DNA of 64,000 bases, taken from NCBI GenBank assembly GCA_965112735.1, contig OZ218960.1, positions 3,100,001 through 3,164,000 of the forward strand. Direction: 5' to 3'. Positions 23,469-38,968 of this stretch are shown one piece after another; positions within the stretch are counted from its first letter, which is position 1, and every line of letters starts with the position of its first letter. The notes beneath the pieces were generated by a model, which ran no database searches, was not told the DNA's origin, and worked only from the letters and a program-made list of their open reading frames with translations. The stretch comes from Phaeosaccion multiseriatum (lineage: Eukaryota > Protista > Ochrophyta, other classes). The position numbers were made by a program, and so were the translations under genes.

Positions 23469-26400
23469 ATGATGCCCGGCGTGCCGGCCCCCGGCCTGCT
23501 CCTTATCGCTCTCTTCACGCTCTTCCTCGCCCTTCCCACCGCGACACTGTCTTTCATCACCACCAGCACGGCGAGACTTGAATTAAGGCAACTGAGTAGC
23601 AGTCCCAGCACGTGTTCGTCAAGAAAGCCATCATTATCGTCCTCTTCATCGGCATCGTGTCGTGTGAGGCTACACATGGCCGGCTATGACGAGATGAACA
23701 CCGCCCTCTCGCAGGACATTTCCTCCTCTCTGGGTATCGCTTATGACGCGAGCTTCAGGGGAGGGAGTGGTGGCTCTGGGTGGGCATCAGTGGGGCCAGT
23801 GGAGGATAAGAACGGCAAGGTATGAATCTGCATGTGGAGTCTTGGCGGCTTCTGCCATGGCGTTTGCTCTGAGTTTACCAGTGGGGACACTTGTTTCCTG
23901 TCTCTCTTGCTCGCTGGCGTTTTGTCTCTTTCTCTCTTCTCTTTGTGTCTCTCGCTCTCTTATTCTCGCTCTCTCTGTCTCTTTGCTGACGCTCGAGCAG
24001 GGGCCCAAGCTGTTTTGCAAGACCACGGGGATGAGTGGGGCAAGCATGCTCAACGCAGAATTCCAAGGTATGTTGTACATGAAGGCTTTCACCAAGGCAC
24101 CAAACAAGTGGAGGGGAGTTATACCGCATGAAGCATCACCCTGACACGAGAGTGCACTGAGTCAAATCAAGCGTACTTTACCCCTCACTTTCCTCTACAC
24201 TCCACCCTTCACAATCCACACTGGCGTATCTATGTAATGCATTGGCCCTCCCCTCCTCTGATAACAACGCAAGTCGACGTGACGACACACACCCCCCATG
24301 CTCTCCTTTGCTACAACACACGATTGTACCTCCTGCTCTGCTATCTGCTGCTGCTGCTACTCAGGCGTGAAAGCCATGCACGAGACTCAGACGGTGAAGG
24401 TGCCGGGCCCCGTGGCGGCCGGGCAGGTGGGGGACAGGGCCTACGTCGTGTTTGAGTATCTAGACATGGGCGGCGGGCGCGGCCAGGACGCAGCCAGGCG
24501 CTTCGGGAGGGAGCTGGCACAGATGCACAAGTGAGTGGGTTGGTGATATGCCTGCCCAGGGAGTGCTGGCTATTTGCTGGCTTATGGTTGGTTAATTGAT
24601 CAAGGACTGATAGGCACAAAAGAGGTGGGGGGGGGGGGGAGGGGGAAACGCAAAGGGAGGGAGGAGAGCGAGAGAGCGTGAGACACAGAGTGATGGTGAG
24701 AGGGAGAGAGACAGGGGAGATGGGAGGCACACAGAGAGACAGGGGAGAGAGGAGAGGAGAGAGAGAAACACACACACAGTGAGGTGTGAAAATACCTGCT
24801 TGCCCGACTGAGTGCCAACGGATCCATCCTGTGCTCGGCCCCTGTGCTCGGCCCCTGCGTTGCGTTGCTCACACCCCCATGGCAAGGTGCACAAGCAAAG
24901 AGGGAAAGTACGGGTTTCACGTCGATAATACGTGCGGAGCCACACCGCAGCCGAACAAATGGACCGACTCATGGGCAGACTTTTGGGATGAGGTGAGATG
25001 AGAGGGAGGGAGGGAAGGAAGGAGGGAGGGAGGGAGGGAGGAAGTGAGGGAGGGAGGGAGGGAGGGAGGGAGGGAGGGAGGGAGGGTGGAAGGGATAGAG
25101 GGAGCGAGGGAGGGGGAGGGAGGGAGGGAGGGAGGGAGGGAGGAAGGGAGGGAGGGGAGAAGCACGGAGTATGGGGAAATGCTTTCAAAAGATCCCGCCC
25201 CCCTGAAGCAGCCCCTGAAGGAGTCTCTATTCAATCTACATAGTCGGGGGTCTCTATTCAATGTAGATAGTCGGGGGTGAGTCCTCACTGATGGAGTCTC
25301 TATTCAATCTATTCAATCTATTCAATCTATTCAATCTAGATAGTCGGGGGTGAGTCCTCACGTCAATTGGATTCCTCGTCAGACAATTTTCTCGGGACAT
25401 GCCCCCCCCTCGGAAACCCTCACCCCTTCCCCCCATCCACTGCCATCCCCCCCCCCCCTCCCCCACAGCACCGCCTGGGCCACATGCTGAAGCTCTGCCG
25501 GAGGAACGGCGCCTCTCTCCCTCGCGAGGCCGAGCTCAGAGCCAAGGTCAAGGCCCTGCTCAGCGAGCACGAGAAGGAGCACGACCTCGCACCCGCTCTA
25601 TGCCACGGAGGTGAGGAGTGGTCGTACCTGCTCGTCCCTCAACTGCCATCTCCACTGCTAGTGACTTGAGGAGTGGTCATGCCTGCTCGTCCCTCAACTG
25701 CCATCTCCACTGCTAGTGACTTGAGGAGTGGTCATGCCTGCTCGTCCCTCAACTGCCATCTCCACTGCTAGTGACTTGAGGAGTGGTCGTGCCTGCTCGT
25801 CCCTCAACTGCCATCTCCACTGCTAGTGACTTGAGGAGTGGTCATGCCTGCTCGTCCCTCAACTGCCATCTCCACTGCTAGTGACTTGAGGAGTGGTCAT
25901 GCCTGCTCGTCCCTCAACTGCCATCTCCACTGCTAGTGACTTGAGGAGTGGTCGTGCCTGCTCGTCCCTCAACTGCCATCTCCACTGCTAGTGACTTGAG
26001 GAGTGGTCATGCCTGCTCGTCCCTCAACTGCCATCTCCACTGCTAGTGACTTGAGGAGTGGTCATGCCTGCTCGTCCCTCAACTGCCATCTCCACTGCTA
26101 GTGACTTGAGGAGTGGTCATGCCTGCTCGTCCCTCAACTGCCATCTCCACTGCTAGTGACTTGAGGAGTGGTCATGCCTGCTCGTCCCTCAACTGCCATC
26201 TCCACTGCTAGTGACTTACCAGCCGCGCAGCCGCGTGTTTTTATGTTCGTTTTTTTCGCCGCGGAGGCTCTCTGCTCTGAGGCGGTGTGCTTACTCACTG
26301 ACTTACTGACTTCCTTACTTTCTGACTTACTTACTGACTTACTTACTGACTTACTCACTGACTTACAACACCACTGACTTACTTACTGACTTACTCACTG

Positions 26401-37515: not shown

Positions 37516-38968
37516 ATGCGTGCTCTGATCTTCCTCTGCTTCCTCGGTCTGATCTCTGTGGCAAAGGCTTTCTCCACTGCGCCTGCGTGCTCTTTCCGGG
37601 CCTCTGCTCTGGCTCCTTTCTCGGCCGGCAGGAGCAGTACAAGCAGTAACGGATTGATGACAATGTCTTACTCCATGCTCACCGTCTGCTTAGGCAACAT
37701 CAATAGAAGCCCGACTGCGGAGGCGGTCCTACAAGGTGAGGAAGAATGACTGAGCAACAAGAAGTCTTTGCTGTGTCCCCTCCTCTGGCTCACCCCCTGT
37801 GTGCTGCCATGTGGATACTGTCTCGTGTGCTGTGTGCGGCAGGGCTCATCAAGGACAAGGGCTTAGACTGGCCGGTGGACAGCTGCGGAACAGGGTGAGA
37901 GAAAGAGGTTAAAATTGTGGAGAGAAGCGTAGGGCCTGAGCGGCTGCCACGGGTGTGAACGTATGATGCACCTCATGCACCCCCGCCTTCTCCTTAACCC
38001 TCTCCATCTCTGTGCTTTCCGTTGTCGATGCACTCCACCAGCGGAGGTGCCGGCGGGTGGTACAAGCCCGGCGGCTTCTCCTTCCACACCGGAGAGCCCG
38101 CTGCGGCCCGCATGAAGCAGGCAGCCAAGGAGAGGGGCCTCGCGCTCAACAGTGTGGCACGCACCCTTACCAAGGAAGATGTGAGCAAGTTCGATCTGCT
38201 GCTCGCTATGGACCCCAGCAACGTTGATGGTGGGTGCGGGGGGGGGGGGTAGGGGATGAATGTCAGTGGATGGAAGAAAGAGGGGGAGGGAGGGAGAGAG
38301 TAGAAGCTCCTTTGCCAGAGGGGCTGGTCCCTCCTCCTTTCGTGCGATGTAAACGCCTCCTACCCTGACAAAACGAACGCGTCAACGCCTTTTTGTTCCT
38401 TGTACCCCCCCCCCCCTCTCTTTATGCCCCATCCCTCACTCACTACGAAAGACATTCTCGATGCTGCGGCCTTCTGGGGAGTGCGGGAGGAGGCCCTCTC
38501 CAAGACGGTGCTCATCACCGATTGGTGCTCCGACCCGGCCGACAGGTGTGAGCCAATGGATCGATACGTCCTCATATTGTGTGTGTGTGTGTGGGGGGGG
38601 GGGGGGGGGGTCTGTGTGTCTGTGTGTCTGTGTGTGTCTGTGTGTTGTGTGTGTCTGTGTGTGGAGCTGCATATAGTGGGTGTATGTATTACGGAGACAC
38701 ACGGGGATGCACAGGTTTGCTTGGTCAGACCTACCTCCCCCTTCTTCTTCTCATCCTCCTTCTCCTCCTCCTCTTCCTCCTCCTCCTCCTCCTCCCCCCC
38801 CTCCTCCTCTTCCTCCTGTGCAGGGGGGTGAGCGTGCCTGACCCGTACTACGACGCGTCCTCCACAGGGCGTGTGCTCGACCTGCTGCAAGACGCCTGCG
38901 CTAACTTGGTGCAGGAGCTGCAGGGGGAGAAGGGCCTGGAGAAGGCACGGGGAAAGAGCAGAGCATGA
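37516..38968 (+). CDS. Low-molecular-weight protein-tyrosine phosphatase with bipartite plastid-targeting presequence; 5 exons
   Basis: Exons 37516-37735, 37843-37894, 38042-38229, 38452-38545, 38824-38968. P-loop VCLGNINRSPTAEAV, DSCGTGGG..WY...FHTGEP...RM, FDLLLAMD..N, VPDPYY. N-terminus MRALIFLCFLGLISVAKA|FS followed by a Ser/Ala/Arg transit peptide. Confidence 0.9.

What the first reader, a model, noticed from the sequence alone, without database searches (positions are those of the whole stretch)
23469..38968. Candidate eukaryotic plastid protein-deglycation cluster: FN3K-family kinase + LMW-PTP, both plastid-addressed, with HslU between them
Seen: an FN3K-family kinase (23469-28273) and an LMW-PTP (37516-38968) lie ~9 kb apart on the same strand. 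Each has a signal peptide ending in an ASAF-type Phe (ATLS|F, VAKA|F) plus a Ser-rich transit peptide. Established: ribose-5-P and erythrose-4-P (Calvin-cycle intermediates) glycate lysines. LMW-PTPs can act as protein-ribulosamine-5-phosphatases, and FN3K-related kinases then phosphorylate C3 so the adduct falls off. Plant FN3K homologues are plastid ribulosamine/erythrulosamine 3-kinases, and some bacteria carry FN3K and LMW-PTP genes side by side. Inference: this may be a physically linked, complete two-step repair route for the secondary plastid, with a protein-quality-control ATPase (HslU) sharing the phosphatase's promoter. I know of no description of such linkage in a eukaryote, but chance adjacency is not excluded.
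Basis: partly seen in the sequence, partly recalled or inferred. Interest (0 to 1): 0.8.

Follow-up and report, generated by a model that had tools for sequence, protein, structure and literature searches.

The report
Plastid deglycation gene pair, linkage unconserved
An alga's genome carries intact genes for two chloroplast-addressed enzymes, a sugar-adduct kinase and a small phosphatase, that probably cooperate in repairing sugar-damaged proteins. Their lying 9 kb apart looks like chance rather than a conserved gene cluster, and the protease-helper gene between them belongs to the mitochondrion.

Summary
A 10-exon FN3K-family kinase gene (23469-28273, +, 372 aa) and a 5-exon LMW-PTP gene (37516-38968, +, 232 aa) are intact. 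Both begin with a hydrophobic signal peptide, a Phe at the predicted cleavage site and a Ser/Thr-rich, acid-poor transit region.

An 11-exon HslU gene (37204-32019) lies between them on the minus strand, head-to-head with the phosphatase (311 bp between ATGs). It has no signal peptide and an Arg-rich, mitochondrial-type leader.

The pathway idea is reasonable. Bacterial FN3K genes fetched here are directly preceded by LMW-PTP genes in 2 of 6 loci with upstream flank and sit head-to-head with one in a third. One metagenomic ORF (P0035) fuses an algal-type LMW-PTP to an FN3K domain. Plant homologues of both are chloroplast proteins.

The cluster idea is not supported. No FN3K or HslU lies within 10 kb of the LMW-PTP orthologue in ten other eukaryotic genomes, including Tribonema, Ectocarpus and Chrysoparadoxa. 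No LMW-PTP lies on 53 metagenomic FN3K contigs, and the two promoters share nothing beyond chance. No RNA data were available.

The phosphatase is unusually divergent and has lost residues that are invariant in its relatives.

The parts
23469..28273 (+). FN3K-family (ribulosamine/erythrulosamine 3-kinase type) gene, 10 exons, 372 aa
   Evidence: Exons are 23469-23819, 24001-24067, 24365-24530, 24887-24992, 25469-25610, 26694-26765, 27264-27328, 27611-27649, 27831-27873 and 28206-28273, all GT-AG. PF03881 hits are collinear. The product aligns end to end with YniA at 1e-47. The motifs HGDLWTGN and FDPATYYGDREVDLA are present. The best solved structure for exon 3 is 6OID, the chloroplastic ribulosamine 3-kinase.
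23469..23684 (+). FN3K bipartite presequence: signal peptide (residues 1-28, ...TATLS|F29) plus an S/T-rich transit-like region (residues 29-72)
   Evidence: Kyte-Doolittle 15-residue maximum is 2.51. The transit-like region holds 18 S+T, 6 R+K and 1 D+E in 44 aa. The YniA alignment starts at residue 76.
37516..38968 (+). Divergent LMW-PTP gene, 5 exons, 232 aa. P-loop C58-L-G-N-I-N63-R64-S65; general-acid loop VPDPYY
   Evidence: Exons are 37516-37735, 37843-37894, 38042-38229, 38452-38545 and 38824-38968, all GT-AG. PF01451 hits. 45-53% identity to algal-type LMW-PTPs. Terminal branch is 2.04 against a median of 0.37. Three positions that are invariant or nearly so in relatives are changed here.
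37516..37671 (+). LMW-PTP bipartite presequence: signal peptide (residues 1-18, ...VAKA|F19) plus an S/T/A-rich transit-like region (residues 19-52)
   Evidence: Kyte-Doolittle maximum is 2.33. The transit-like region holds 12 S+T, 2 R+K and 0 D+E in 34 aa. Ochrophyte orthologues carry the same signal-peptide-plus-Phe design.
32019..37204 (-). HslU (AAA+ unfoldase of the HslVU protease) gene, 11 exons, 589 aa, with a mitochondrial-type leader. Not part of the proposed route
   Evidence: Exons are 37204-36638, 36348-36288, 35960-35875, 35612-35410, 35081-34958, 34610-34557, 34178-34059, 33749-33608, 33408-33266, 32657-32565 and 32195-32019, all GT-AG. Exon pieces match TIGR00390 collinearly. 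The N-terminus is Arg-rich with a Kyte-Doolittle maximum of -0.05, so there is no signal peptide.
37205..37515 (.). 311-bp divergent intergenic region between the HslU and LMW-PTP start codons
   Evidence: Coordinates come from the gene models. It shares no word with the FN3K upstream region beyond chance: the longest shared word is 9 nt, reached in 116 of 200 shuffles.
28274..32018 (.). Convergent 3' intergenic stretch between FN3K and HslU. No recognisable gene; rich in micro- and minisatellites
   Evidence: Ten ORFs of 85-200 aa in or overlapping this stretch gave no Pfam hit. Tandem repeats are listed.

Best explanation
The window holds two ordinary, intact nuclear genes for plastid-imported enzymes.

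What the two enzymes probably do:
- One is an FN3K-family ketosamine 3-kinase, of the kind that in plants is a chloroplast ribulosamine/erythrulosamine 3-kinase.
- The other is a fast-evolving member of the algal/plant LMW-PTP clade.
- They most likely work in the same stroma. Plausibly they act in sequence, as in the route described for bacteria and mammals. The phosphatase first removes the terminal phosphate from lysine adducts formed by ribose-5-P or erythrose-4-P. The kinase then phosphorylates C3, so the adduct falls off.

Why the cluster reading fails:
- Their lying 9.2 kb apart on one strand is most probably a chance or lineage-specific arrangement without regulatory meaning. It is not a conserved cluster.
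- The HslU gene between them sits on the opposite strand and carries a mitochondrial-type leader. It is an unrelated neighbour that merely shares a short divergent intergenic region with the phosphatase.

Basis of each step:
- Shown: the gene models, family membership, catalytic motifs, leader features, and the lack of conserved linkage.
- Inferred: plastid import, the substrates of both enzymes, and the sequential action.
For: - Gene models and families.
- Leaders.
- Conserved plastid addressing of the phosphatase. Orthologues from Phaeothamnion, Tribonema, Ectocarpus, Fibrocapsa and Chrysoparadoxa all have a signal peptide followed by Phe. Red and green algal members have transit-peptide-like extensions. 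Arabidopsis AT3G44620 is in the chloroplast proteome.
- Functional coupling elsewhere. LMW-PTP overlaps or abuts FN3K in L069 and L073 and is divergent in L075, that is 3 of 6 bacterial loci with upstream flank. There is also the fusion ORF P0035.
- Papers on the route were seen only as titles in reference lists and in one summary of the S. aureus system.
- No linkage from the phosphatase side. No PF03881 gene and no tblastn hit for FN3K or HslU lies within 10 kb of the LMW-PTP orthologue in L001, L002, L003, L006, L009, L010, L011, L012, L014 or L015 (tblastn). As a positive control, the same query finds yniA at 1e-41.
- No linkage from the kinase side. No LMW-PTP lies on 53 metagenomic FN3K loci totalling 194 kb.
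- No shared promoter word beyond chance.
- Chance estimate (my inference). The genome is at least about 70 Mb (1,094 noted 64-kb windows). A given partner gene then falls within 15 kb of another with probability about 4e-4. Over the tens of thousands of gene pairs a reader could call functionally related, dozens of such adjacencies are expected per genome.
Against: - For this particular pair the prior for meaningful linkage is raised, because bacteria keep the two genes in operons and one ORF fuses them.
- The nearest available genomes are not close relatives. No database protein exceeds about 53% identity to the phosphatase, so conservation within the alga's own class is untested.
- In gene-sparse genomes such as Ectocarpus, a 10-kb flank reaches only the first neighbour.
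- Co-expression could not be examined.
- The phosphatase has lost the second P-loop cysteine and an otherwise invariant Asp. Its activity or substrate may therefore differ from the LMW-PTPs that have been characterised.
Confidence: 0.68

Rival explanations
1. The neighbourhood is a real, lineage-specific functional gene pair. Selection or shared chromatin keeps the two plastid repair genes close so that they are expressed together. The unusual divergence of the phosphatase reflects specialisation for sugar-phosphate adducts.
For: - Both genes are on the same strand and address the same predicted compartment.
- Bacteria keep the two genes in operons, and one ORF fuses them.
- The phosphatase's terminal branch is 5.5 times the median, and residues invariant in relatives are changed.
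Against: - An unrelated gene on the opposite strand and 3.7 kb of repeat-rich spacer lie between them.
- The gene order is the reverse of the bacterial LMW-PTP-then-FN3K order.
- There is no linkage in 10 eukaryotic genomes or on 53 FN3K contigs.
- The promoters share no motif beyond chance.
Confidence: 0.12
2. The two enzymes do not share a pathway. The phosphatase acts on phosphotyrosine proteins in the plastid, like cyanobacterial Slr0328-type PTPs or Arabidopsis APH, or has drifted to another substrate. FN3K works with a different phosphatase or on unphosphorylated ketosamines.
For: - The algal clade's best solved relatives are protist PTPs and Synechocystis Slr0328 (E about 1e-47 to 1e-51). 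These score well ahead of the Thermus, S. aureus and human enzymes, which I recall were the ones shown to act on ribulosamine 5-phosphates.
- Arabidopsis LMW-PTP is reported as a tyrosine phosphatase in ABA signalling.
- Oomycetes, which have no plastid, keep the same clade without a leader.
- The window protein has lost conserved residues.
Against: - From my recollection of Fortpied 2007 and Gemayel 2007, ribulosamine-5-phosphatase activity was found in distantly related LMW-PTPs (human, Thermus, S. aureus), so it looks like a general property of the fold. Only the titles of these papers were seen here.
- The Chlamydiales LMW-PTP that overlaps FN3K is 40-42% identical to algal-type members.
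- The fusion ORF P0035 uses an algal-type LMW-PTP domain.
Confidence: 0.2

Closest known systems
Bacterial LMW-PTP/FN3K operons (Gemayel et al. 2007, FEBS J 274:4360; seen here in L069 Chlamydiales and L073 Cytophagales)
   Same: The same two enzyme families are involved, and the proposed two-step removal of ribose-5-P and erythrose-4-P adducts is the same.
   Different: In bacteria the genes overlap or abut on one strand, with the phosphatase first. Here they are 9.2 kb apart, the kinase comes first, each has its own promoter and introns, and an unrelated gene lies between them.
Plant chloroplast ribulosamine/erythrulosamine 3-kinase (Fortpied et al. 2005; PDB 6OID) and chloroplast LMW-PTP AT3G44620
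   Same: Both are nuclear genes for plastid-located homologues of both enzymes. Window FN3K exon 3 matches 6OID best among solved structures. The window LMW-PTP belongs to the same algal/plant clade, which has the DSCGTGGG...WY insertion.
   Different: The window proteins use a bipartite leader (signal peptide plus Phe) for a secondary red-type plastid. No linkage of the two genes is reported in plants, and the plant LMW-PTP has also been given an ABA-signalling role.
Mammalian FN3K-RP plus LMW-PTP-A (ACP1) route (Fortpied et al. 2007, Biochem J 406:139)
   Same: The biochemical logic is the same: phosphatase first, then 3-kinase.
   Different: The mammalian enzymes are cytosolic and their genes are unlinked. 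Human and bovine LMW-PTPs are more distant from the algal clade (E about 1e-29 to 1e-32) than Slr0328 is (1.5e-47).
P0035, a metagenomic 639-aa ORF with LMWPc (117-280) and Fructosamin_kin (369-638)
   Same: An algal-type LMW-PTP and a eukaryote-type FN3K are physically joined, behind an N-terminal extension.
   Different: It is a true single ORF rather than two neighbouring genes. It is a singleton from one 2.1-kb contig, probably dinoflagellate-like, and is unverified.
Eukaryotic mitochondrial HslVU
   Same: The window HslU is a full-length TIGR00390-type protein with an Arg-rich N-terminal extension.
   Different: Nothing links it to the plastid or to deglycation.

Membership tests
Fructosamine/ketosamine 3-kinase family (Pfam PF03881) | Full-length, collinear match to the family profile or to a known member | tested here: met
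   Exon pieces hit PF03881 at profile positions 61-116, 117-152, 150-193 and 194-218. The spliced protein aligns over residues 76-371 with YniA residues 1-285 at 1e-47.
Fructosamine/ketosamine 3-kinase family (Pfam PF03881) | Catalytic-loop motif HGDLWxGN (the Asp and Trp are required in human FN3K, PMC13223202) and the downstream DPA..YG..E.DLA motif | tested here: met
   HGDLWTGN and FDPATYYGDREVDLA are present in the spliced product. The D217A and W219A loss of activity is cited.
Fructosamine/ketosamine 3-kinase family (Pfam PF03881) | Kinase activity on protein-bound ribulosamine or erythrulosamine | not testable with these tools
   Needs an enzyme assay.
[quoted passage not shown] | N-terminal P-loop C-X5-R-(S/T) and general-acid Asp in a DPYY loop | tested here: met
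   C58-LGNIN-R64-S65 and VPDPYY are present. PF01451 hits on exons 1 and 3.
[quoted passage not shown] | Second P-loop cysteine (CLGNICRS) and the Asp of the GE.AD.RM loop, conserved in the algal/plant clade | tested here: not met
   The window has Asn where 202 of 203 relatives have Cys, and Ala where 226 of 226 have Asp. These residues are conserved but are not the catalytic triad, so family membership stands while typical regulation or substrate fit is doubtful.
[quoted passage not shown] | Ribulosamine-5-phosphatase or erythrulosamine-4-phosphatase activity | not testable with these tools
   Needs an enzyme assay.
Plastid-targeted protein of a red-type secondary plastid (ASAFAP-type bipartite leader) | Signal peptide, aromatic residue (Phe) at +1 of the cleavage site, and a hydroxylated, basic, acid-poor transit region | tested here: met
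   Both proteins meet it by composition and hydrophobicity. Ochrophyte LMW-PTP orthologues share the design. SignalP, ASAFind and HECTAR were not available, so the cleavage sites are read by eye.
Conserved eukaryotic gene cluster / operon-like unit | Linkage kept in related genomes | tested here: not met
   Of 10 eukaryotic LMW-PTP loci, none has FN3K within 10 kb. Of 53 FN3K contigs, none has LMW-PTP. Close relatives of this alga were not available.
Conserved eukaryotic gene cluster / operon-like unit | Co-expression or a shared regulatory element | tested here: inconclusive
The upstream regions share no word beyond chance.
HslU (TIGR00390) | Collinear full-length match with Walker A and B motifs | tested here: met
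   Exon pieces match profile positions 1-36, 87-139, 222-258, 259-304, 307-352 and 386-441 of 441. GPTGCGKT and IVCIDELDK are in the spliced product.

The most novel reading that the evidence does not exclude
In this ochrophyte lineage the plastid LMW-PTP has been remodelled: it has lost the redox-protective second P-loop cysteine and an otherwise invariant Asp, and evolves about five times faster than its relatives. On this reading it has become a dedicated protein-ribulosamine-5-P/erythrulosamine-4-P phosphatase. It is kept near the plastid FN3K as a co-regulated two-gene repair module, which would be a eukaryotic counterpart of the bacterial LMW-PTP-FN3K operon and of the P0035 fusion.
Probability: 0.1. 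Interest if true: 0.55.

Novelty: new member of a known kind. Interest (0 to 1): 0.3.

Why it matters
If the two enzymes do act in sequence in the stroma, algae with secondary plastids would have a complete repair route for proteins glycated by Calvin-cycle sugar phosphates. That route has been proposed for plants and bacteria but never shown in a plastid.

The useful results here are three:
- Plastid addressing of the LMW-PTP is conserved across ochrophytes.
- Bacterial operons and one fusion ORF independently tie the two families together.
- The physical linkage in this window should not itself be counted as evidence, because it is not conserved.

The genes themselves are ordinary members of known families.

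Tried and rejected
- Word search with the open frame around LMW-PTP exon 5 (region 92-138): no candidate. The window's own proteins and close relatives are not in that database.
- tblastn of FN3K exon 3 against plasmids: no match.
- Aligning the ten FN3K exon pieces onto E. coli YniA to build a profile (A2): MAFFT scattered the short pieces, so I discarded the alignment. This is why no ochrophyte FN3K orthologues were retrieved, and why conservation of the FN3K leader is untested.
- The look-up of sequencing runs: five holders from one coded organism, none on record as RNA.
- The papers by Fortpied (2005, 2007) and Gemayel (2007) are not held. I saw only their titles in reference lists, so their content as given here rests on my own knowledge.
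- A relic of one co-transferred bacterial operon, considered and rejected. Both genes are intron-rich and the order is reversed. The phosphatase sits inside a broad eukaryotic clade, with no recent bacterial affinity.
- A further gene hidden between FN3K and HslU, considered and rejected. There are no Pfam hits and the stretch is mostly satellites.
The fusion therefore could not be inspected at the DNA level.
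Full report
**What is in the sequence**

The window is GC-rich (about 58%), intron-rich eukaryotic DNA full of micro- and minisatellites.

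FN3K gene:
- The ten exons listed under parts join 23469 to 28273, with canonical GT-AG at every intron. The ORF encodes 372 aa.
- Four exon pieces hit Pfam Fructosamin_kin (PF03881) at successive profile positions.
- Exon 3 matches only one kinase among solved structures: 6OID, 'Protein-ribulosamine 3-kinase, chloroplastic', at 3.8e-9.
- The spliced protein aligns from residue 76 to its end with the whole of E. coli YniA (33% identity, 1e-47).
- The catalytic-loop motif HGDLWTGN and the FDPATYYGDREVDLA motif are intact.

LMW-PTP gene:
- Five exons join 37516 to 38968, encoding 232 aa.
- PF01451 hits on exons 1 and 3.
- It has a C-X5-R-S P-loop (C58...R64-S65) and a VPDPYY general-acid loop.

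HslU gene:
- It lies between the two, on the minus strand. It has 11 exons (37204 down to 32019) and encodes 589 aa.
- Its pieces match TIGR00390 hslU collinearly.
- It is convergent with FN3K, with 3,745 bp between the stop codons. It is divergent from the phosphatase, with 311 bp between the ATGs.
- The convergent spacer holds no recognisable gene.

**Targeting**

- Each of the two plus-strand proteins starts at the first ATG of its open frame. In each, the leader lies in the same exon as the start of the catalytic domain.
- FN3K has a hydrophobic core (Kyte-Doolittle 15-residue maximum 2.51) ending ...TATLS|F. A 44-residue stretch follows with 18 Ser+Thr, 6 Arg+Lys and one acidic residue.
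- The phosphatase has a core (maximum 2.33) ending ...VAKA|F. A 34-residue stretch follows with 12 Ser+Thr, 2 Arg and no acidic residue.
- This is the signal-peptide, Phe, transit-peptide design of proteins imported into red-type secondary plastids. I read the cleavage sites by eye, because no predictor was available.
- Independent support comes from relatives. LMW-PTP orthologues of Phaeothamnion (...TAA|F), Tribonema (...IYS|F), Ectocarpus (...CSA|F), Fibrocapsa (...SLA|F) and Chrysoparadoxa (...SKA|F) have the same design.
- Red and green algal members carry ordinary transit-peptide-like extensions.
- Arabidopsis AT3G44620 was identified in purified chloroplasts (PMC2291561).
- HslU is different. 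Its N-terminus is Arg-rich with no hydrophobic stretch (maximum -0.05). That fits a mitochondrial presequence, the usual location of eukaryotic HslVU (my knowledge).

**Is the pathway idea sound?**

- The key papers are not held in the library. Their titles appear in reference lists: plant ribulosamine/erythrulosamine 3-kinase, human LMW-PTP-A as protein-ribulosamine-5-phosphatase, and bacterial FN3K homologues. One open paper summarises the S. aureus ptpA/FN3K system as a putative repair system for ribose-5-P adducts.
- I tested the bacterial gene-neighbourhood claim directly. A scan of bacterial genomes with an FN3K alignment returned seven loci.
- Of the six with upstream flank, two have an LMW-PTP ORF overlapping the start of FN3K on the same strand. 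These are the Chlamydiales L069 (3403-3897 and 3866-4774) and the Cytophagales L073 (3367-3840 and 3827-4702).
- A third, the Campylobacterales L075, has the two genes divergent and 60 bp apart. All were confirmed with Pfam.
- By chance I also found P0035, a 639-aa metagenomic ORF with a complete LMWPc domain (117-280) of the algal type followed by a complete Fructosamin_kin domain (369-638).
- The kinase half of P0035 is 57-60% identical to proteins whose cluster includes Prorocentrum and Polarella sequences.
- P0035 is the only such fusion found among candidates of 351-1118 aa, and it comes from one 2.1-kb contig. It is suggestive, not proven.

Together these results make a functional tie between the two families credible. 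The tie to plastids rests on predicted co-location.

**Is the linkage meaningful?**

I looked at the LMW-PTP orthologue with 10-kb flanks in ten other eukaryotic genomes or contigs:
- Chrysoparadoxa (L001), Tribonema (L011) and Ectocarpus (L012);
- Cyanidioschyzon (L006) and Porphyridium (L014);
- Chloropicon (L015);
- four unnamed eukaryotic contigs (L002, L003, L009, L010).

None has a PF03881 gene in its gene table. tblastn with the spliced window FN3K and HslU finds nothing in any of them (scripts). The same query finds E. coli yniA at 1e-41, which serves as a positive control.

Further tests:
- From the kinase side, 53 metagenomic FN3K loci (194 kb) hold no LMW-PTP.
- The HslU/phosphatase head-to-head pair is not conserved either.
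- The 400 bp upstream of FN3K and the 311-bp divergent region share no word longer than 9 nt, a length reached in 116 of 200 shuffles.

Chance estimate (my inference):
- The scan has notes on 1,094 64-kb windows of this genome, so the genome is at least about 70 Mb.
- A specified partner then falls within 15 kb of a gene with probability about 4e-4.
- Multiplied over the tens of thousands of gene pairs that could be called functionally related, dozens of such neighbours are expected per genome.

Limits of these tests:
- No close relative of this alga is in the databases. The best identity to the phosphatase is 53.5%, to a cluster that includes Vitrella.
- 10-kb flanks reach only one or two genes in brown-algal-type genomes.

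**An unexpected feature**

- The window phosphatase is much more diverged than its relatives. In a 48-sequence tree its terminal branch is 2.04 substitutions per site, against a median of 0.37, and it cannot be placed.
- An AU test does not reject its belonging with the eight ochrophyte sequences (p = 0.365). An orthologue with accelerated evolution is therefore a sufficient reading.
- It carries Asn where 202 of 203 relatives have the second P-loop Cys. In bovine LMW-PTP this is the Cys that protects the nucleophile by disulfide formation (my knowledge).
- It carries Ala where 226 of 226 relatives have Asp in the GE.AD.RM loop.
- It carries Asp-Ala, plus a one-residue deletion, where most relatives have Gly-Gly after DPYY.
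- The nucleophile Cys, the Arg, the Ser and the general-acid Asp are retained.
- The FN3K also sits on a longish branch (1.47 against 0.55), but no ochrophyte FN3Ks were in that tree for comparison.
- Possible causes are relaxed constraint, a changed substrate, or a paralogue whose canonical twin lies elsewhere in the genome. Which applies is open.

**Verdict**

- The plastid deglycation route is a reasonable inference. It fits what has been proposed for plants and bacteria, so it extends a known idea to a secondary plastid.
- The claim that the genes form a physically linked unit, with HslU as a partner, is not supported by any test I could run and is most likely chance.
- Earlier notes of the scan on this genome call it an ochrophyte or brown-lineage alga. 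My data are compatible with that but do not prove it.

Noticed in passing
P0035 (metagenomic protein, JGI; not in the window): A single 639-aa ORF joins an algal-type LMW-PTP domain (117-280) to an FN3K domain (369-638) behind an N-terminal extension. The kinase half is 57-60% identical to a cluster that includes Prorocentrum/Polarella proteins. It is the only such fusion found and comes from one 2.1-kb contig.
   Followed up: partly
window 37687-37707 (P-loop), 38090-38110, 38836-38871: The LMW-PTP has Asn for the second P-loop Cys (202 of 203 relatives have Cys) and Ala for an Asp found in 226 of 226 relatives. The motif after DPYY is also altered. Its terminal branch is 5.5 times the median.
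   Followed up: partly
L069 3403-4774; L073 3367-4702; L075 3300-4654: The bacterial FN3K genes most similar to algal FN3Ks come largely from Chlamydiales (L069, L070, L071, L074). In L069 and L073 an LMW-PTP gene overlaps the FN3K start, and in L075 the two genes are divergent.
   Followed up: yes
window 28262-28546: A 50-bp tandem repeat (5.7 copies, 96% matches) begins inside the last codons and stop codon of FN3K. The C-terminal ...MAM-stop is therefore encoded by the first repeat unit.
   Followed up: no
window 25612-26217 and 26290-26572: FN3K intron 5 holds an 11-copy 55-bp minisatellite (98% matches). A 283-bp CTTACTNA-type array follows it.
   Followed up: no
P0194, P0222, P0224, P0235, P0256, P0272 (oomycete proteins): Oomycetes, which lack plastids, keep the algal/plant-type LMW-PTP (173-183 aa) without any N-terminal extension. 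The clade is therefore not restricted to plastid-bearing organisms.
   Followed up: no
window 40452-40823 (-), 57720-58415 (-), 61444-63057 (-): Neighbouring exons match MFAP1 (a pre-mRNA processing factor), ankyrin repeats and an RGS domain. No other repair or plastid gene was recognised near the pair.
   Followed up: partly
It was left out of all later searches.
   Followed up: no
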